From: Salpingoeca rosetta
Taxonomy: Eukaryota; Protista; Choanoflagellata
DNA: 23,150 bases
Direction: 5' to 3'
Assembly: GCA_033442325.1 (NCBI GenBank)
Contig: JAWQFM010000003.1
Coordinates: 1,244,139-1,267,288, forward strand
Numbering within the stretch: position 1 is the first letter of the stretch; each line of letters starts with the position of its first letter. The notes beneath the pieces were generated by a model. It worked only from the letters and a program-made list of their open reading frames with translations. It did no database searches and had not been told where the DNA came from. Shown piece by piece: positions 1-21,976 of this stretch. A program made the position numbers and the translations under genes.

Positions 1-20
1 GTTCATGGTGGTGGTGCTGT

Positions 21-159
21 TGTTGGAGACTTGTGTGTGTGCTGTGTGTGCTGTGTGTGCTGTGTGTTGTGTGGGAGATTGTCTTGGCAAGAGGAAGTTG
101 TGTGTGTTTACTTGAGTTGTGAAGCAAACAAGGATGTAGGATGAATGAACACTCCAACA
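21..159. mobile_element. Putative short solo LTR (copia-type termini TGTTGGAG...CTCCAACA)
   Basis: 139-bp segment bounded by a perfect 8-bp inverted repeat (tgttggag 21-28, ctccaaca 152-159) with TG...CA ends, next to a copia pol remnant. No matching target-site duplication (gctgt vs gaaag) and no clear PBS or PPT. Confidence 0.35.
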
Positions 160-413
160 GAAAGAAACAGAGCAGAAGACAAGAGTTGTCGACAACGCAA
201 AGTGGTGACGTGGCAGTGTTTGTTGAGAGTTGTGTGGTTATGTGGTGTGTTATGCAAGAGCATGTAACATCGAGCAACCACACAAGCTAAACACTGCACG
301 TGCAACAGGTTGGAGGGAAGTCACGTGAACATTCCAGAACACAAGAGAGGTGAATGCAAATTTGTGGTGTCCTGAAGGAGGGAGGTCAATGATGACTCAG
401 CAGACAGGACTTG

Positions 414-1200
414 CCTGTCAACATTGACAGTCGTGACCACTGTGAGGGGTATGGCGTCCTTCGCGTCGGCGACGACGGGCCCGAAGACGTTGTGACGGTC
501 GAGGTTGGCGATCTCCTCCTGAAGTAACTACTCGGAAGATAGCAAAGCGCAGCTCCCTCGATGAAATAGATACCGCGCGTACTGCTTGCGCGTCCTCTCT
601 GACGGAACAAGTGCTGTTCATCGCCGCGCTTAGGCAGAAGCAAGTTGACACGCTGGCACTCTTCACACGCTTTACCGCAAGGCAACCGTTCATCCTGCTG
701 GACAGCAGCGCGTGTAAGCATCAAAAGTACCATGCAGAACCCCACTGTTGACTGACAAGCCCTGTCTGCTTACAAATATCATCCACCTCCCGTCTTCACA
801 TCAGTTGCACCTTCCGACACCACAGTCTGCACTCATCCCTGGCTGTTGGTGACGCCTTTGGTAGCGGGCGGTGCGAGAGTTACAATGGAGTCGATGTAGG
901 ACAGGGCGCAGCCACACTCCATGGTAACGAGCTGTACATTGTATACGGTGACAACTCTGTTGGTGCTTGGTGTGGAATCCGTTGATCACAAAGCCCGCGT
1001 GTATATACTGGGCCAAGCGTTGGATTGCCGTGTTGTTTTTGCCGTTTCCGTCATTCATGCAGGCGGAATACGCATCAAGTGAGCACACTTCTGCACCACT
1101 AAAACACGATGGCATGGCAAGCCAAATACTAATATGCGCAGGTCATATTTATAGGACAGCCCACTGAACAAGCATGTCAACAAGGATGACAGCAGCACCA
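414..1200 (-). mobile_element. Degenerate Ty1/copia retrotransposon pol remnant (integrase C-term, SH3-like segment, start of RT)
   Basis: Frameshifted minus-strand fragments in copia order: LFSGLSYKYDLRILVFGLPC (~1110-1171; cf. ELFxGxKPDLSHLRVFGC), RLAQYIHAGFVINGF (~975-1020; weak match to KLxxRxxxGxFxGY), LPSSY, then LLQEEIANLDRHNVFGPVVADAKDAIPLTVVTTVNVDR (414-527; cf. AMxEExxSLxxxxVFGPVV...AIxxKWVFxxK). Confidence 0.5.
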
Positions 1201-1445: not shown

Positions 1446-3458
<2,013 letters not shown>

Positions 3459-3829
3459 CCACGCGCTTTCACTCTCGATTCCTCGACATACACACATGTC
3501 GTGTGTGCGTGTGCGTGACTTTGATGCAAGGGTGTATGCAGTGTAGTCGATTTACTCAGCAATGTAATTGGCATCATGAACGAATAAGATGCACAAGCAA
3601 GTTGACCAGAGTACAAACAGTCAGTGTCGCACAGCCTTCCCCAGGAAGGCATGGTACAGGCGACAATGTCAAACGATGGATCAGCAAAGTCACAGCAGCA
3701 GAAGACCAAAGCTTCTGGTGGGCGCATATCAGCAAATAGAGAAACAAGAAGGGAAGGAGAGGAAGGACAGACGAAGGAAAGACGAACAAACAATCAGCGC
3801 ACAGCCACAAGGGGGCGCAGGAGGGTCTA

Positions 3830-6800
3830 CTACACATCAGACGCTGGCGTTGGGGTTCTGTGGCGCAGTTGTGCAGACGTCGGTGTCGCAGCTCGTGCCC
3901 GCGACAGAATCGACTTCAGCTCCTGCTCCTCCGCTGGCGTCTGTGGCAGCTGGCGCTGAAGTTCCTGCATGTCCATGTAGGGAGAGTCAGCAGCGTTATC
4001 TGGGGCTCCGGGTTGCATTTGCTGCTTGGCGTCACTGATGTCACCGGCAAGGTCAAGAGCATCAGGGTCAAGCACGAGCATGCGCTTCTTGTTGGGCTGT
4101 TGTTGCTTGTTCGGGGCAGACGACATATTTGGTGCGTTCTTGGTGTACAGCTCGTTCCGGCGTGGAGCAAGCATGTTGGAGCGAGACAGCCGGCGCTGGC
4201 GTGACAGCACATCTGCCTTCTCTGGACGGCCAAACACATCACCACCGTCATTGCGATCATCGTCATCGACGCTGCCATAATCAGCCCTGTCGTACGTTGT
4301 GCTGCTGTAAGCCCCTGCGTTGGCGTAATCGTACCCTGCACGGCTGTATGCGGGGTTGCTGGCGAAGTCATAGCCAGTGTTGCTTGCCTCGTCATAGCCA
4401 GTGTTGCTTGCCTCGTCGTAGCCAGCGTTGCTTGCCTCGTCGTAGCCGGCATAGCTGGCCGTGTCGTAGTCCGCATGGTCGGCTGCCGCGTACTCTGCGA
4501 CAGATGAGAGCTCTGCCGTCGTGATGGAGGACGAGTGGCTCTTGTGCGGCTGTGAGTACACCGGTGAGGACAAATCTGTTCCGCTGAGCGAGCGGAGCGC
4601 CGCGGACAGTGCGGCTGTGCTGGACTTGCGGCTGCGGTGGTCGCTGAAGGCAAAATGTTCAGACCGCAGAGACTCACGACGCTTGGCACGACGGCGGGCA
4701 ACCAGGACAGCGACAATGGCAACCAGCACCACGAGCGCGCCAACGCCGAGGATGACGCCCGAAGTCAGAGTGAACCTGTTGTCGTCGCCGCCTGAGGCGG
4801 ATGTCGCGTCGCCAGAGCTGCCGCTCGCATCTCCGTTCTTTGGCTTCTTGCCCTTCTTCGGTTTCTTGCCGTCCTTGTGCTTGCCCGGGGCAGGGTCAGC
4901 GGTGGTCGTAGTCGTTGAGATGGGGCGGTGATCGCCGCTAGTGCACAGCTCAACGCCTTCGCTCTCCACAGAAATGCACACGTCTTCTGCGGCGATGGCA
5001 CGCTCAACGCGCTTTGCCACGGCTCGGCTCACCACGCCAATGACAACATCCACGCCATGGCGGCCTTTGGTCACGTCAATCGAGCGGATGTCTTTCGGGC
5101 CTGCAATCTTCTCCAGCACCAGGTGCTCCCAGACAGCGCCAGCAAAGTCAAGCGCAGCGCGGCTGTCGGAGCTGTGGAAGAGGTTCTTGAAGTCCACATC
5201 GGGGAACGTCACGGTGACATAGTGGATGCGAGACGTGCCTGTCGTGGTGGCTGTACGCGTAACGGATGCGGTTGTGGTGCTGTGCTCACGGGTTGTGCCA
5301 GTCTCGGTCTCCGTCCTCGTCTCTGTTCGGGTCTCTGTGAGCGTCTCTGTGCGCGTGATGGGCTCCGTGGTGGTGTCGGTCCGTGTGGCAGTGGCATGTG
5401 CGGTGGTGGTTTCGGTCGGCCTGGTGGTCGTCGGACGCTCCGTTGTCGTGGTGCGACGCTCAGTGGTGGTGGTTGGGCGCTCAGTTGTTGTGGTACGACG
5501 CTCAGTGGTGGTGGTTGGGCGCTCAGTTGTTGTGGTACGACGCTCAGTGGTGGTGGTTGGGTGCTCAGTGGTCGTGGTGGATGGCTCCGCACGGTCACAG
5601 CAGTAGTCCCGGCTGCCACAGAAGCTGTCGCTCGGGCACGCATGGCCAGACTGACCGCAGAAGATGAGGTTGCCAAGGAAGTCACGTGTCGCAGTCAAGT
5701 CACCACACACATCTCCACCAGGAGTAGTCGTAGTGCGACGCTCTGTGGTGGTAGTTGGGCGCTCCGTGGTGGTGGTGCGACGCTCCGTGGTTGTGGTTGG
5801 TGCCCTTGTGGTTGTGGTGCGACGCTCCGTGGTGGTGGTGGATGGCTCCGCACGGTCACAGCAGTAGTCCCGGCTGCCACAGAAGCTTCCACCTGGGCAC
5901 GCATGGCCAGACTGACCGCAGAAGATGAGGTTGCCAAGGAAGTCACGTGTCGCAGTCAAGTCACCACACACATCTCCACTAGGAATATTCGTAGAGCGAC
6001 GCTCTGTGGTGGTAGTTGGGCGCTCCGTGGTTGTGGTGCGACGCTCCGTGGTGGTAGTTGGGCGCTCCGTGGTGGTGGTGCGACGCTCCGTGGTTGTGGT
6101 TGGTGCCTTTGTGGTTGTGGTGCGACGCTCCGTGGTGGTGGTGGATGGCTCCGCACGGTCACAGCAGTAGTCCCGGCTGCCACAGAAGCTTCCACCTGGG
6201 CACGCATGGCCAGACTGACCGCAGAAGATGAGGTTGCCAAGGAAGTCACGTGTCGCAGTCAAGTCACCACACACATCTCCACCAGGAGTAGTCGTAGTGC
6301 GACGCTCTGTGGTGGTAGTTGGGCGCTCCGTGGTTGTGGTGCGACGCTCCGTGGTTGTGGTTGGTGCCCTTGTGGTTGTGGTGCGACGCTCCGTGGTGGT
6401 GGTGGATGGCTCCGCACGGTCACAGCAGTAGTCCCGGCTGCCACAGAAGCTTCCACCTGGGCACGCATGGCCAGACTGACCGCAGAAGATGAGGTTGCCA
6501 AGGAAGTCACGTGTCGCAGTCAAGTCACCACACACATCTCCACCAGGAGTAGTCGTAGTGCGACGCTCTGTGGTGGTAGTTGGGCGCTCCGTGGTTGTGG
6601 TGCGACGCTCCGTGGTGGTAGTTGGGCGCTCCGTGGTGGTGGTGCGACGCTCCGGGGTTGTGGTTGGAGCCTTTGTGGTTGTGGTGCGATGCTCTGTAGT
6701 GGTGGTGGATCGATCCGACGTAAGAACATTAACCCGGCTGCACAGAAGATTCCACTTGGGCATCATTATATATGAACCTAAGATTAGGAAATTAAAATAT

Positions 6801-7224
6801 CATTATCGGGTTAGTGTCCTAGACGTTTCGCCAGTAGTTTTTTGGCGCGACGGTGGTGGGNNNNNNNNNNNNNNNNNNNNNNNNNNNNNNNNNNNNNNNN
6901 NNNNNNNNNNNNNNNNNNNNNNNNNNNNNNNNNNNNNNNNNNNNNNNNNNNNNNNNNNNNNNNNNNNNNNNNNNNNNNNNNNNNNNNNNNNNNNNNNNNN
7001 NNNNNNNNNNNNNNNNNNNNNNNNNNNNNNNNNNNNNNNNNNNNNNNNNNNNNNNNNNNNNNNNNNNNNNNNNNNNNNNNNNNNNNNNNNNNNNNNNNNN
7101 NAAAAGCCGTCTTTCATTTCGCGCGACAACCCGAAATTTCCGCAACGCGGGGCTCATCCACCTCCCGTCAACACCGTCCTCAGGGGCAGGTCGTGCTTTT
7201 GCTGGTCGCAATGCATGGGGGCTC

Positions 7225-7255
<31 letters not shown>

Positions 7256-7496
7256 CAGTAGCAGCATCAGCAGCAACATCACCACCACCACCTTGCCGTC
7301 CCGCTCTTCTCCCCCTTTCTTCTCTTGTTGCTGTTGTGGAAGAAGTCGAGCCGCCATCTTCCCGTAGTTGCACTCCGGTTCTGCCAATGGCGCTACTCTC
7401 GCTCGAGTCAGCAGACTTCATCATTAAGCCACACGCAGCTGCAACCATGAACACCACCGCCGCCGCCGCCACCACCACCGCCCAGACGCGCGCCAT
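3830..7496 (-). CDS. Type I transmembrane mucin-like receptor: signal peptide, 6-Cys repeats alternating with Thr-rich spacers, SEA-like domain, TM, Tyr-repeat cytoplasmic tail, PDZ-binding C-terminus; spans an assembly gap
   Basis: Uninterrupted ORF from 3830 to ~6710. N-terminal part 7496 to ~7102 begins with a hydrophobic signal-like sequence (MARVWAVVVAAAAVVFMVAAACG). TM GVILGVGALVVLVAIVAVLVA (~4697-4759) is followed by RRRAKRR. The protein ends ...PASDV*. Joining the two parts across the gap is inferred. Confidence 0.8.
4367..4447 (-). repeat. 24-bp coding tandem repeat encoding GYDEASN[A/T]
   Basis: Plus-strand unit gtc[a/g]tagccag[t/c]gttgcttgcctc repeated 3 times plus a partial copy. 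Confidence 0.9.
5580..6835 (-). repeat. Coding tandem repeat: Cys module (CGDLTATRDFLGNLIFCGQSGHACPGGSFCGSRDYCC) plus 21-bp TTTTER[R/P] units, period alternating 261/303 bp
   Basis: Near-identical modules at ~5580, 5841, 6144 and 6405, plus a degraded fifth at ~6708. Confidence 0.95.
6861..7101. other. Assembly gap (N run) inside the mucin gene
   Basis: 241 N. Flanking bases 6720-6860 look like a low-quality read of another repeat copy. Confidence 0.99.
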
Positions 7497-7808
7497 CGCC
7501 GAAACAGGGCAGCAGCGAACGACACACGAACCCCCTTCTCTTCGAGGTTGCTGAGCAGCCTCTGTTAGCCGTTTGTCGAGTGCCGAATGTCGCGTGAGTC
7601 GAACGATGCCGTGTGACCTGCAGTGCGAGGTGGTGCAGCAGCAGCGGAATCATCACCAGCAGCGTTCAACTCGCTTGCCGGCTGCTGAAAATCATACAAA
7701 AATTTGGCGATTCCTCCCAACTCGAAGGCAACCCCCCAACAACAGCAGCAACAAAACAAACGAACCAACACAGCACATCTTTTGCTGCTGCTGCTGTGCG
7801 CGAGCGAG
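7497..7808. promoter_or_regulatory. Divergent (bidirectional) promoter region between the mucin receptor and DAW1, with candidate RFX/X-box-like sites
   Basis: 312 bp between head-to-head ATGs. Contains GTTGCTGAGCAGC (7547-7559) and a GGCAAC half-site (7727-7732). Confidence 0.45.
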
Positions 7809-8998
7809 ATGCGGCTGCGACGGTTCCTGCTGCGGTATCACCCACCAGGTGTGTATGCGTGTGTGCGTGTGTGTGTGCGTGTGTGCGTGTGTGTTTGTAC
7901 AACCCCAGAGTGCCGAGAAAAGCACTCACTCAGTAAGCAGAGAGCGTACGCACACACACACATAGACAACAACGCGTGCACAAACATACACACACACACA
8001 ATCTCAAGCACACACATACACACTCTCAAACAAACACACACAGTCTCAAGCACACACTGAAAAGCACACTCAAACACACACACATACATGCGCATCTGGG
8101 CGCCCATCATCTTCAACGTGCTCAGGTGTCATTCTTGAGTATACAAAGGGCGGGGAGCAGCGGTCCAAGTGCATTGACCTTCTGGACCTTGATGAGACGT
8201 AAGTCGCGGGCGACCTGCAATGTTCGTACGAACAATGGCACGCAGGAAAAAGGCCAACACCCGTCTCTTACTCTGCCCCACTCTGCCCCACTCTGCCTGA
8301 CTCGCATCTGCATGGTTTGGGTGGACAGCACAAATTTGGACGAAGTACTGGACGAAATCACACAGCGGGAGGCCCTCATCACGGAGCGACGCAAACCACA
8401 GCTCAAACAGCTGCTCACCCGGTTGCAACAGCAGCTAGGAGCATTGGCATCCCACAAGCAGCTTGCGCTGTCCAAGGTTGTTGGCCTGCGGTCACTGTGG
8501 TCACTGTGGTCACTGTGGTGCACTTGTTTCTCGTCGTGGACAACCGTTTCCACATTCCTCATAATGTGTTCCTACCTCAAGCATGACATTCATACCTCTG
8601 GCCACCCACGCCCACCAGGTGATCAAGGCACATGTCCTGCCGTTGACCAACATTGCACTGAACAAATCTGGCACAAGGTTAATCACAGGCAGCTATGACC
8701 GCACCTGCAAGGTAGCCAATGTATTTGTATCCTGGCACTTTCTTTGAGTGGCAGGGTTTTTGTGTGTGCGTGTGTGTGCGTGCGTGTGTGTGTGTGCGTG
8801 TGCGTGTGCGTGTGCGTGTGTGCTTGTGTGCAAGTATGCTTGTGCGTTTTGGACAAGAATGCGCTTGTTTCTTGGGCAGCTGCATGCATGCGTTGGTTTC
8901 GCTTTCGTTCCCGGCTTCACGATGCAAACGAACACACACACACACACACTAACACACACAGACACACAGACACACACACACACACACTAACACACACA

Positions 8999-20595: not shown

Positions 20596-21976
20596 CCTCT
20601 CTCTCCCTCTCTGTCCCTGTCTCTCTGTGTCTCCTTGCCTTGATTCTTTTTGTGCTCGTGATTGAGCAACGATTCATGTGACTGGTTGGCGCAGGGACGT
20701 ACTTGCGGGACGGATACATCTACGCATCACTGGTAGGACAGCGGGTGGAGACAAAGAAGCCTGAGGACAGCAAAGACACAAAGGTCTGTGGAACGATGGC
20801 CGCTGCTTCACTGTCTTTGTCTGAGGCTCGTTTGGCCCAGGTTCCAGCACGTTGTGCCAGCTTGTCGCATGTTGAGTGACGGATGACTTACAGCTTGCTT
20901 TTCCTGTGACTTGAAACTTGCTGTTGCTGTGCTTGGATTATGTCTTTGCTGCTGAACAGCCGGTCATCTCAATCCATCGACCAGGCCAAATTGCTTCCCT
21001 CGTGCCGACTGTGGGCACCGTCGTCACATGCAAGGTGGTTGTGAGAGTGAGTGTGTGTGTGAGACAGAGAGTGTGTATGTGTGTGTATGTGTGTGTGTGT
21101 GTGTGTGTGCATGCGTATGTTTGCACTCGGGAAAGCAGCCACCCTTAGCTCTTGCATGAGATAACGAGGACGCTAAGCGGCAGGATTGGAGTGCGCATGC
21201 ATGCAAGTGTGCGTGTTGTTGTCGTTGTTGTTGGCTTCACTCATGCTGTCCTTCCGTTTCACACACCAATATGACGCAGGTCATATCCATGAATCCTCGC
21301 TTTGCAAAGACAAAGATCCTGTGTGTGGGCGCAGTACCACTGCAACAATCGTTTTCAGGCATCATCCGGTGTGTGTGTGCGCGTGTTTGTGAACTTGCAT
21401 CAAAGATGTGTGTGCTTCTGCACCACGACTGCAGCCCCGGTGTCGTTGTGGCACTTGCAGCATTCACTTACGCAGCCAANNNNNNNNNNNNNNNNNNNNN
21501 NNNNNNNNNNNNNNNNNNNNNNNNNNNNNNNNNNNNNNNNNNNNNNNNNNNNNNNNNNNNNNNNNNNNNNNNNNNNNNNGTGTGTGTGCATGTGTGCATT
21601 TCGTTTCCCCATTTCATGCCAACCCATCGTGTGAATTGCAGGTGTGTTGATGAAACCTGTTGGGTTGATGGAGATGGAATGCCCAAAGACAAAGGCGAGG
21701 GTAAGTCTAATCGCTGCTGTGCGCCAATGCGTGCTGGGTGCTGTGTGTGCATGTGTTGATGCTCGTGTCAGTTTGTGTCTGGCATGCTTCGTATGTGCGT
21801 GTTGTACACGTTTGCGCGTGCGCAGCGCCTCTTGTGTGCATTTCTGCACGTCAGCTGACATGTGTGACGACCACGCTGGGTCACAGGAGCAGCGAAAGGT
21901 CGCGCTGATTGCGGAAGAGGACACGGCGGAAGAAGACAGCGATCGAGCCATGGATACCAGCACCACCACGTCGTAA
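20284..21976 (+). CDS. EXOSC1: RNA exosome cap subunit CSL4 (middle exon or exons fall in the gap)
   Basis: Exons 20284-20386 (MTEDKK...VLVTPGTRL...AGE), 20695-20783 (GTYLRDGYIYASLVG), 20960-21034 (LVPTVGTVVTCK), 21280-21368 (VISMNPRFAKTKILCVG...FSGIIR), 21642-21700 (MKPVGLMEMECPKT), 21886-21976 (EQRKVA...*). Confidence 0.9.
21480..21579. other. Assembly gap (100 N, probably a placeholder length)
   Basis: N run located where the central S1-domain exon(s) of CSL4 are expected. Confidence 0.99.

What the first reader, a model, noticed from the sequence alone, without database searches (positions are those of the whole stretch)
3830..7496. Kinase-less mucin-type signalling receptor: Cys-repeat/mucin ectodomain coupled to a pTyr array, YxxM and a PDZ ligand
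Seen: signal-like N-terminus, a possible furin-type site (REERGRR), at least 5 Cys modules separated by Thr-rich spacers, an alpha/beta membrane-proximal domain, one TM, and a ~290-aa low-complexity tail. The tail has no catalytic domain but carries several docking-type motifs. Known: animal signalling mucins and adhesion receptors (MUC1, podocalyxin, nephrin, syndecans) work this way by recruiting Src-family kinases, SH2 adaptors and PDZ scaffolds, and choanoflagellates have expanded Tyr-kinase and SH2 repertoires. Inference: this is an uncharacterised glycocalyx, adhesion or prey-sensing receptor that feeds a pre-metazoan phosphotyrosine/PDZ circuit.
Basis: partly seen in the sequence, partly recalled or inferred. 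Interest (0 to 1): 0.8.

Follow-up and report, generated by a model that had tools for sequence, protein, structure and literature searches.

The report
Choanoflagellate mucin-stalk membrane protein, tyrosine-motif tail

Summary
The window is Salpingoeca rosetta scaffold GL832959.1. The 978-aa minus-strand ORF (3833-6766) is real, annotated as a single exon, and transcribed from the minus strand.

**Confirmed**
- Four Cys6 modules, not five, sit on TTTTERR/TTTTERP Thr-rich stalks.
- There is a ~100-aa alpha/beta membrane-proximal domain, one TM helix and a 288-aa low-complexity tail.

**New here**
- An exhaustive search found a small family sharing this domain, the TM and the tail.
- Members are an S. 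rosetta paralogue (XP_004996065.1, "fibropellin Ia", 2508 aa) and several environmental proteins.
- Conserved tail elements are Y-[DE]-x-A arrays (7 seen, 0.32 expected), an RQRRLS...LYTxNAP box, and a near-invariant C-terminal 26-aa box ending in Val.

**Not supported**
- The YxxM motif is not conserved and is expected by chance (P = 0.29).
- The PDZ-type ending is only partly conserved (SDV, LDV, SNV).
- No SEA domain or other known domain was shown.

**Unresolved**
- The link to the 7496 ORF is untested. No spliced read was seen.
- No public run supports the gap flank 6700-6860, which holds the annotated ATG.
- Relative read depth on the two sides of the gap differs between libraries.

Kinase-less choanoflagellate membrane proteins with SH2-docking Tyr arrays are already published (PMC5043372). 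This is therefore a new variant of a known kind. Phosphotyrosine signalling is inferred, not shown.

The parts
3678..3832 (-). Stop codon (3830-3832) and about 150 nt of 3' UTR
   Evidence: The RNA-like contig of run X1 ends at 3678. Stranded RNA reads stop between 3551 and 3701.
3833..6766 (-). Annotated single-exon CDS, 978 aa (P0001)
   Evidence: Stranded reads of X21 and X22 lie in the orientation expected for minus-strand RNA.
3833..3922 (-). C-terminal box ELKSILSRARAATPTSAQLRHRTPTP plus ASDV (residues 949-978)
   Evidence: The box is identical in paralogue P0002 and differs at one residue in environmental P0003. The endings are SDV, LDV and SNV.
3968..3979 (-).
   Evidence: It is not conserved in P0002 or P0003. 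At least one YxxM occurs in 29% of shuffled tails.
4130..4210 (-). Conserved box VLSRQRRLSRSNMLAPRRNELYTKNAP (residues 853-879)
   Evidence: It aligns in P0002, P0003, P0004 and P0005. It holds an RRLS basophilic-kinase-type site and the best-conserved Tyr of the tail (Y874).
4277..4492 (-). Tyr array (13 Tyr, 7 Y[DE]xA), partly built by 24-bp duplication
   Evidence: Tandem Repeats Finder gives period 24 over 4367-4476. Seven motifs were seen against 0.32 expected, and none of 5000 shuffles reached that count.
4697..4762 (-). Transmembrane helix (residues 669-690), followed by RRRAKRR on the tail side
   Evidence: Mean Kyte-Doolittle hydropathy is 2.86. A weak Pfam match to TM_ErbB1 falls below its cut-off.
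4925..5233 (-). Membrane-proximal alpha/beta domain (residues 512-614) with conserved Cys597 and Cys608
   Evidence: The AF2 model has pLDDT 69 and a ferredoxin-like topology. The domain is conserved in P0002, P0004/P0006, P0005 and P0008. No Pfam or PDB sequence match was found.
5234..6706 (-). Thr-rich stalk (TTTTERR/TTTTERP, 42-bp units) interleaved with the Cys modules
   Evidence: Tandem Repeats Finder gives periods of 21, 42, 261 and 303. Residues 21-511 are 36% Thr.
5579..5716 (-). Cys6 module 4 (residues 351-396)
5840..5977 (-). Cys6 module 3 (residues 264-309)
6143..6280 (-). Cys6 module 2 (residues 163-208)
6404..6541 (-). Cys6 module 1 (residues 76-121), pattern C-x15-C-x6-C-x5-C-x5-CC
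   Evidence: The model has pLDDT 73 and no fold match.
6722..6860 (-). Gap flank not reproduced by any other data; it holds the annotated ATG, the in-frame TGA and a candidate acceptor AG
   Evidence: Depth is zero in all four runs. No run holds any of 13 sampled words of 6700-6860. An X1 contig already departs from the window at 6622.
6861..7101 (.). Assembly gap; the true length exceeds about 255 nt
   Evidence: A 1036-nt contig of X3 carries 260 nt beyond 7103 that match nothing in the window.
7102..7496 (-). Upstream ORF with a 23-residue hydrophobic N-terminus, open into the gap; candidate true first coding exon
   Evidence: It starts at the first ATG downstream of the apparent transcript start. 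It stays open for 131 codons, and for 10 more after read-based correction. Minus-strand RNA depth is 1-17.
7497..7627 (-). Likely 5' UTR; the promoter region is shared with a divergent plus-strand gene that starts near 7809
   Evidence: Depth falls from about 12 to about 1 above 7627, and the read orientation switches there. The neighbouring gene is listed.

Best explanation
The locus encodes a type I, heavily Thr-rich (probably O-glycosylated) surface protein of Salpingoeca rosetta. It belongs to a small, so far undescribed family.

The family core has three parts:
- a ~100-aa ferredoxin-like membrane-proximal ectodomain with two conserved Cys;
- one TM helix with a basic stop-transfer stretch;
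- a disordered cytoplasmic tail of about 290 aa.

The tail carries three conserved elements:
- an array of Y-[DE]-x-A motifs;
- an RQRRLS...LYTxNAP box;
- a near-invariant C-terminal 26-aa box ending in x-x-Val.

The part of the ectodomain far from the membrane varies between members. Here it is four near-identical Cys6 modules on Thr-rich stalks. In the paralogue it is about 20 EGF repeats, a SUEL lectin domain and two of the same modules. In one environmental member there is nothing but a signal peptide.

The most likely mode of action is a kinase-less docking platform. The exposed modules bind something outside the cell. Cytoplasmic or receptor tyrosine kinases then phosphorylate the acidic Tyr array. 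The multivalent pY-[DE]-x-A sites, together with the two conserved boxes, recruit SH2-type and other adaptors.

Shown here: the architecture, minus-strand transcription, the family and the motif conservation. Inferred: glycosylation, topology, phosphorylation, the binding partners and any signalling output. The true N-terminus is unknown.
For: - ORF and annotation.
- Minus-strand RNA and the 3' end.
- Family members found by exhaustive phmmer: P0002 at E = 6e-90 and 48% identity across domain, TM and tail; P0003 at E = 5e-50; P0004, P0005, P0006 and P0008 at E of about 1e-9 to 1e-6.
- Identities and sources of the members.
- Conserved blocks.
- Y[DE]xA enrichment: 7, 4, 6, 3 and 7 motifs against 0.2-0.3 expected in five members.
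- P0006 carries the end of a Cys module, a Thr stalk, the domain and the TM, so the module-stalk-domain order exists in another organism.
- P0005/P0022 has a signal peptide directly before the domain.
- A C-terminal [ST]-x-[VLI] occurs in only 2% of shuffled tails.
- Precedent for kinase-less S. rosetta membrane proteins with cytoplasmic Tyr-motif arrays: two pYDVP peptides from one of them bound a choanoflagellate Crk SH2 domain (PMC5043372).
Against: - There are no phosphorylation data. The peptides were absent from the two supplementary files held for the S. rosetta p38 paper that was searched.
- To my own knowledge, Ala at +3 is not the preferred residue of any well-characterised animal SH2 class.
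- The annotated N-terminus has no signal peptide (mean hydropathy -0.15), and the real one is unresolved.
- Within each protein the array grew partly by tandem duplication, which inflates the per-protein statistics.
- The environmental members have no assigned organism.
- Both structure models are single-sequence and of moderate confidence.
Confidence: 0.6

Rival explanations
1. This is a structural glycocalyx or adhesion protein without phosphotyrosine signalling. On this reading the conserved tail boxes serve sorting, Ser/Thr-kinase regulation (RRLS and TP sites) or anchoring to the cortex. The Y[DE]xA repeats would then be an acidic, low-complexity spacer or a non-SH2 binding motif.
For: - The most constrained parts of the tail are the RQRRLS box and the C-terminal Ser/Thr-Pro-rich box, not the Tyr array, whose number and spacing vary.
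- No known SH2 class prefers Ala at +3 (own knowledge).
- The ectodomain is dominated by stalk and repeat sequence.
Against: Y[DE]xA recurs independently in members that are only 25-30% identical. Tyr, the acidic +1 residue and Ala +3 are all kept while the neighbouring residues drift. That is the behaviour of a selected linear motif. S. rosetta membrane proteins with YDVP arrays have published in-vitro SH2 binding.
Confidence: 0.3
2. The ORF at 7496 is not part of this gene. It would be a separate short transcript from the bidirectional promoter, and the real signal peptide and possibly further modules would lie in the unread gap.
For: - No joint links the two sides.
- In runs X21 and X22 depth is 5-17 over 7100-7627 but about 1 over the body.
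- In run X1 the body has depth of about 15 and 7103-7900 has none, so the ratio reverses between libraries.
- An X1 contig leaves the window at 6622 into other Thr-rich coding sequence (TSTTTTRRPR...).
- The 23-residue hydrophobic stretch is long for a cleaved signal peptide.
- The ORF found no relatives.
Against: - Both sides are transcribed from the same strand, with no annotated gene between them.
- 7496 is the first ATG after the apparent transcript start, and the ORF stays open for more than 140 codons into the gap even after read-based correction.
- A type I protein needs a signal sequence, and family members P0002 and P0005 have one.
- The tool states that holes in contig coverage prove nothing.
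Confidence: 0.4
3. The repeat region is an assembly construct. The number and order of the Cys modules, or their attachment to this tail, would then result from collapsed or chimeric assembly with the paralogous locus on GL832960.1.
For: - Modules 1-3 are identical over 138 nt.
- They differ from the paralogue's modules at only 2-4 of 138 nt, although the tails are 48% identical.
- Short-read contigs break throughout 5480-6620, and reads carry variants at 5726, 6396, 6416 and 6434.
- The gap flanks are erroneous or unsupported.
Against: - The unique tail and domain sequence runs without a break into the Thr-rich stalk as far as 5483 in contigs of two runs.
- Module 4 has its own substitutions.
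- Environmental P0006 shows the same order of module, stalk, domain and TM.
- The stalk DNA of the two loci is only about 80-86% identical.
Confidence: 0.15

Closest known systems
S. rosetta transmembrane proteins with cytoplasmic YxxP arrays (PTSG_05573, PTSG_12435, PTSG_12436; Shigeno-Nakazawa et al. 2016, PMC5043372)
   Same: They come from the same organism. They are single-pass and kinase-less, with a cytoplasmic array of acidic Tyr motifs proposed as SH2 docking sites. Two pYDVP peptides from PTSG_05573 bound M. brevicollis crka1 SH2 in vitro.
   Different: The motif here is Y[DE]xA, and the tail has only one YxxP (YSQP). No sequence relationship was detected, as those proteins are not among the phmmer hits. 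The ectodomain and the conserved tail boxes differ.
S. rosetta XP_004996065.1 'fibropellin Ia' (P0002)
   Same: It is a true paralogue. It has the same membrane-proximal domain, TM, tail boxes, Thr-rich stalk units and Cys6 modules.
   Different: It is 2508 aa and carries a signal peptide, about 20 EGF repeats and a SUEL lectin domain that the window's ORF lacks. It has only two Cys modules. Its tail is 48% identical and has no YMDM.
Animal membrane mucins (MUC1 type)
   Same: Both have a Thr-rich tandem-repeat stalk, an alpha/beta membrane-proximal domain, one TM and a short signalling tail with Tyr sites.
   Different: No SEA domain was shown. There was no Pfam hit, no SEA structure among the listed fold matches, and no G-S-V-V-V cleavage motif. 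A language-model search gave SEA clusters only as a weak lead (score 0.85). No sequence homology was found.
Nephrin and the p130Cas substrate domain (multivalent YDxV or YDxP arrays that recruit Nck or Crk)
   Same: Both have repeated acidic Y-D-x-small/hydrophobic motifs in a disordered region, which suits multivalent SH2 recruitment (own knowledge; Cas is covered).
   Different: The +3 residue is Ala. There are no Ig/FN3 or SH3/FAT domains. Binding is untested.
Fungal Wsc/Mid2 cell-surface sensors
   Same: Both have a Cys-rich head on a Ser/Thr-rich glycosylated rod, one TM and a short tail without an enzyme domain (PMC6685044, listed but not read here; otherwise own knowledge).
   Different: There is no WSC domain by Pfam. 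The tail here is much longer and Tyr-rich, and the lineage is different.

Membership tests
New family: membrane-proximal domain, TM and conserved tail (P0002, P0003, P0004/P0006, P0005, P0008) | Homologous ~100-aa membrane-proximal domain with two conserved Cys | tested here: met
   Columns F10, A27, F30, L38, I52, C86, C97 and G100 are invariant across 5 members.
New family: membrane-proximal domain, TM and conserved tail (P0002, P0003, P0004/P0006, P0005, P0008) | Array of Y-[DE]-x-A motifs in the tail | tested here: met
   Seven motifs were seen against 0.32 expected here, and the motif is enriched in 5 of 6 members.
New family: membrane-proximal domain, TM and conserved tail (P0002, P0003, P0004/P0006, P0005, P0008) | RQRRLS...LYTxNAP box and C-terminal ELKSILSRARAATPTSAxLRHRTPTPxxxV box | tested here: met
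   The first box is present in 5 members. The second is present in the 3 closest members and absent from P0022, which ends at a real stop.
Animal SEA-domain membrane mucins | SEA domain (PF01390), usually with a G/SVVV autocleavage site | tested here: not met
   There is no Pfam hit even at E = 10 and no SEA entry in the listed fold matches. The beta2-beta3 turn reads GRHGVDVV. Only a weak language-model lead points to SEA.
Animal SEA-domain membrane mucins | Pro/Thr/Ser-rich tandem repeats next to one TM helix | tested here: met
Choanoflagellate YxxP-array membrane proteins (PMC5043372) | [quoted passage not shown] | tested here: not met
   There is one YxxP (YSQP at residue 737).
Fibropellin / EGF-repeat proteins (the paralogue's annotation) | EGF-like domains | tested here: not met
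   Pfam finds no EGF domain in the 978-aa ORF, whereas P0002 has 20. The unread 5' part could not be tested.
Class I PDZ ligands | C-terminal [ST]-x-hydrophobic residue, conserved in relatives | tested here: inconclusive
   The endings are SDV here, LDV in P0002 and SNV in P0003. The chance rate is 2%. Binding cannot be tested with these tools.
p85-type SH2 docking site (YxxM) | YxxM conserved in relatives | tested here: not met
   It is absent from P0002 and P0003 and expected by chance in 29% of shuffles.
Receptor kinases | Catalytic domain in the tail | tested here: not met
   The tail has no Pfam domain at E = 10.

The most novel reading that the evidence does not exclude
A family restricted to choanoflagellates uses a multivalent pY-[DE]-x-A array, plus an invariant C-terminal box, as a docking code read by SH2 or other adaptors that are not yet identified. 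This would be an independent, pre-animal counterpart of nephrin- or Cas-type scaffolds. Its exposed Cys6 modules would be kept identical between distant paralogues by gene conversion, which implies a shared external ligand.
Probability: 0.3. Interest if true: 0.65.

Novelty: new variant of a known kind. Interest (0 to 1): 0.5.

Why it matters
Choanoflagellates have very large tyrosine-kinase and SH2 repertoires, but almost none of their substrates or docking sites are known. This family offers a defined, conserved and repeated Tyr motif (Y-[DE]-x-A) on a surface protein of a genetically tractable species. Which reader domain binds it, and what the exposed modules sense, can therefore be tested directly.

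The work also corrects the gene model. The annotated start codon lies in sequence that no other data set reproduces. It also shows that the paralogue's name, "fibropellin", hides a shared signalling-type core.

Tried and rejected
- **Pfam.** Scans of the whole ORF and of each part gave nothing above cut-off.
- **Word-index searches.** The tail half found only itself. The family alignment found only known members. The 7496 ORF found nothing. Low-complexity words probably swamp these searches.
- **phmmer hits P0007 and P0009-P0012.** These are unrelated tandem-repeat proteins and were rejected.
- **SEA domain.** It is not supported by Pfam, by a PDB profile search or by Foldseek and VIA. The best structural matches are generic ferredoxin-like folds. 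They include the SorCS2 membrane-proximal region at Z 8.7 and the Trop2 C-domain at Z 7.1, which is within the range the tool calls common.
- **Cys6 module.** No fold match was found; the best is Evasin-3 at Z 2.3. No PDB profile match was found, and the Atlas lead of 0.76 is below use.
- **Grb2-type YxN at Y874.** This was rejected because the Asn is at +3 (YTKN), not +2.
- **Published S. rosetta phosphoproteome supplements.** Peptides of this protein were not present in the two files held.
- **Closing the gap.** The two read-derived overhang sequences occur nowhere in the window or in the paralogous locus.
Full report
**What the sequence is**

The window is part of Salpingoeca rosetta assembly GCA_000188695.1, scaffold GL832959.1. 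The finding's main body is a 978-aa ORF on the minus strand, 3830-6766 with the stop codon. The public annotation calls exactly this ORF as a single-exon gene.

Its neighbours are:
- an aldo-keto reductase gene downstream;
- a divergent plus-strand gene that starts near 7809;
- a copia-type retroelement at the window's left edge.

**Anatomy, from the translation**

- Residues 21-511 are 36% Thr. They are built of 42-bp TTTTERR/TTTTERP units nested in 261- and 303-bp repeats.
- Four 46-aa modules with six Cys (C-x15-C-x6-C-x5-C-x5-CC) are embedded in this region. They cover residues 76-121, 163-208, 264-309 and 351-396 and are 91-99% identical to each other.
- Residues 512-614 model as a beta-alpha-beta-beta-alpha-beta sandwich (single-sequence AF2, pLDDT 69, pTM 0.65).
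- Residues 669-690 form a strongly hydrophobic helix, followed by RRRAKRR.
- The remaining 288 residues are low-complexity (Ala, Ser, Asp and Arg rich, 5.6% Tyr) and have no Pfam domain even at E = 10.

**Expression**

Two stranded RNA runs from 2026 (X21, X22) put all reads over 3702-6721 in the orientation expected for minus-strand RNA. The flanking plus-strand genes give the opposite orientation in the same runs. Depth over the body is low, about 0-3. An RNA-like contig from 2011 (X1) covers 3678-5483 and ends about 150 nt past the stop codon, which looks like a 3' end. The gene is therefore transcribed.

**The gap, tested first**

- No read or contig joins the two sides, and no joint of any kind was reported.
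- From 7103, ten RNA reads of X22 and a 1036-nt DNA-like contig of X3 continue co-linearly into the gap. The X3 contig carries 260 nt there without reaching the other flank. The gap is therefore longer than that, and it contains transcribed sequence that is not spliced out at 7103.
- Reads omit single bases at 7132, 7134, 7164 and 7183, so the assembly has errors at this flank.
- On the other flank, depth is zero over 6722-6872 in all four runs.
- No public run holds even one of 13 sampled 31-mers of 6700-6860, although 20 runs hold the adjacent gene body.
- One X1 contig already leaves the window at 6622 and runs into different Thr-rich coding sequence. That sequence occurs nowhere in the window or in the paralogous locus.

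The annotated start codon (6766), the in-frame stop above it (6800-6802) and the candidate acceptor AG (6778-6779) all lie in sequence that nothing else reproduces. The annotated N-terminus MMPKWNLL... is not hydrophobic. It is unlikely to be the real start of a type I protein.

**Is the 7496 ORF the real start?**

In favour:
- Minus-strand RNA covers 7103-7627, and depth falls sharply above about 7627.
- 7496 is the first ATG below that point.
- The ORF opens with a 23-residue hydrophobic stretch.
- It stays open for 131 codons to the gap, and for ten more after read-based correction.
- No other gene is annotated between the ORF and the gene body.
- Family members P0002 and P0005 have N-terminal signal peptides.

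Against:
- No joining read was seen.
- Depth is 5-17 over 7100-7627 against about 1 over the body in X21 and X22. X1 shows the reverse, about 15 over the body and nothing at 7103-7900. The tool warns that holes in contig data prove nothing.
- The hydrophobic stretch is long for a cleaved signal peptide.
- The ORF has no detectable relatives.

I put the link at roughly 55-60%. The REERGRR furin-type site sits in this untested ORF and could not be evaluated.

**Relatives**

Word-index searches found only the protein itself. The exhaustive phmmer search with residues 505-978 found a real family.

| Protein | Source | Match to the query | Notes |
|---|---|---|---|
| P0002 | S. rosetta XP_004996065.1, 'fibropellin Ia', 2508 aa, scaffold GL832960.1 | 48% identity across domain, TM and tail | Signal peptide, ~20 EGF repeats, a SUEL lectin domain, the same stalk units and two of the same Cys6 modules |
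| P0003 | Marine metatranscriptome | 52% identity over TM plus tail | Complete C-terminus |
| P0006 | Environmental | Domain and TM | End of a Cys module, a Thr stalk, the domain and the TM |
| P0005 / P0022 | Environmental | Domain, TM and tail | Signal peptide directly before the domain |
| P0004, P0008 | Environmental | Domain, TM and tail | |

Five further hits are unrelated tandem-repeat proteins. The conserved core is therefore the domain, the TM and the tail, and the outer ectodomain is variable. The environmental contigs carry no taxonomic label. Restriction to choanoflagellates is thus an inference.

**What is conserved in the tail**

1. **Y-[DE]-x-A arrays.** Counts are 7, 4, 6, 3, 1 and 7 motifs in six members, against 0.1-0.3 expected from shuffles. 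No more than 3 of 5000 shuffles reached the observed count in five of the members. In this gene the array grew partly by 24-bp duplication. The arrays in members that are only 25-30% identical have different spacers, so the motif itself is under selection.
2. **The box VLSRQRRLSxxNxLxPRRxxLYTxNAP.** It contains an RRLS site of the basophilic-kinase type and the single best-conserved Tyr. This is not a Grb2-type YxN, because the Asn is at +3.
3. **The box ELKSILSRARAATPTSAQLRHRTPTP.** It is identical in the paralogue despite 48% overall identity, and 25 of 26 residues match in P0003. It is followed by SDV, LDV or SNV.

The terminal Val is conserved, but position -2 is not. The PDZ-ligand reading is therefore possible but unproven, and the real constraint lies upstream of it.

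**The folded parts**

The membrane-proximal domain has no Pfam or PDB sequence match. Structure searches return generic ferredoxin-like folds. The top matches include two membrane-proximal domains of animal type I receptors: SorCS2 (Z 8.7, rmsd 3.1, 100 residues aligned) and Trop2 (Z 7.1). Both fall within the range the tool describes as common. A language-model search pointed weakly to SEA clusters (score 0.85). No SEA structure was listed and the autocleavage motif is absent, so SEA membership is not shown. The Cys6 module (pLDDT 73) has no fold match.

**A side observation on the modules**

The module DNA differs at only 2-4 of 138 nt between the two paralogous loci. The tails of the same two proteins are only 48% identical, and the stalk DNA is about 80-86% identical. 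This points to recent gene conversion or module transfer between the loci. It is also a reason for caution about the assembly of the repeats.

**Mechanism**

The best-supported reading is a kinase-less, mucin-stalked surface protein whose tail acts as a docking platform. What is shown is the architecture, transcription, family membership and motif conservation. What is inferred is O-glycosylation, topology (from the positive-inside rule), Tyr phosphorylation and adaptor recruitment.

The concept has a published precedent in the same organism. Shigeno-Nakazawa et al. (PMC5043372) described S. rosetta transmembrane proteins with cytoplasmic YxxP arrays. They showed that two pYDVP peptides from one of them, PTSG_05573, bind M. 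brevicollis crka1 SH2 in vitro. The present protein is not one of those: it has only one YxxP and no detected homology to them. Its +3 Ala fits no well-characterised SH2 class that I know of, so the reader domain is open.

The main rival is a structural or adhesive glycocalyx protein whose tail serves sorting or Ser/Thr regulation.

**Verdict**

The Tyr array stands. The YxxM does not. The PDZ ligand and the 5' exon remain open.
- The protein belongs to a new small family, but to a kind of system that is already known.

Other first-stage notes on this genome describe further kinase-less mucin-stalk proteins with Tyr-rich tails. I did not test them.

Noticed in passing
window 7132, 7134, 7164, 7183: Four single bases in the assembly are missing from the RNA reads that cover them and from a DNA-like contig. 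At three of the four places every covering read lacks the base; at 7164 it is 2 of 7 reads in run X22. These look like assembly errors at the gap edge, and they shift the reading frame of the last ~30 codons before the gap.
   Followed up: partly
window 6700-6860: No public run holds any sampled 31-mer of this gap flank, and no read or contig was laid on 6722-6872. The stretch is unusually AT-rich for this genome. The annotated start codon of the gene lies inside it.
   Followed up: yes
window 5579-6541 versus L002 8710-9192: The Cys6 modules of two paralogous genes on different scaffolds differ at only 2-4 of 138 nt, mostly in codons that stay synonymous. The tails of the same proteins are only 48% identical. 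This suggests gene conversion or recent module transfer.
   Followed up: partly
window 5726, 6396, 6416, 6434: Most RNA reads carry a different base from the assembly at these repeat positions. They probably come from other repeat copies or from the paralogue, although strain differences are possible.
   Followed up: no
window 7225-7275: A (GCA)17 repeat encodes poly-Ala in the 7496 ORF frame, and poly-Leu or poly-Cys in the other two frames. A contig of run X3 has 3 nt fewer across this stretch.
   Followed up: no
window 7628-7900: Read orientation switches here, and plus-strand RNA depth rises to about 27. This fits a bidirectional promoter shared with the divergent 417-aa gene annotated from about 7809.
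   Followed up: partly
window 1-693 (L001 16074-22937): A copia-type retroelement ORF (RVT_2, SH3_retrovirus) runs off the left edge of the window on the minus strand.
   Followed up: no
window 2526-3458 and 7800-8100: Long (CA)n/(TG)n microsatellites lie in the introns and flanks of the aldo-keto reductase gene and upstream of the divergent gene. They produce many spurious Cys/Val and His/Thr ORFs.
   Followed up: no
window 21480-21579: A second assembly gap of 100 N.
   Followed up: no
same genome, other pieces (notes s1-434382, s1-432452, s1-432556): First-stage notes describe other kinase-less, mucin-stalked proteins with 12-18-Tyr tails in S. rosetta. If these hold up, Tyr-rich docking tails may be a broad class in this genome rather than a peculiarity of this gene.
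   Followed up: no
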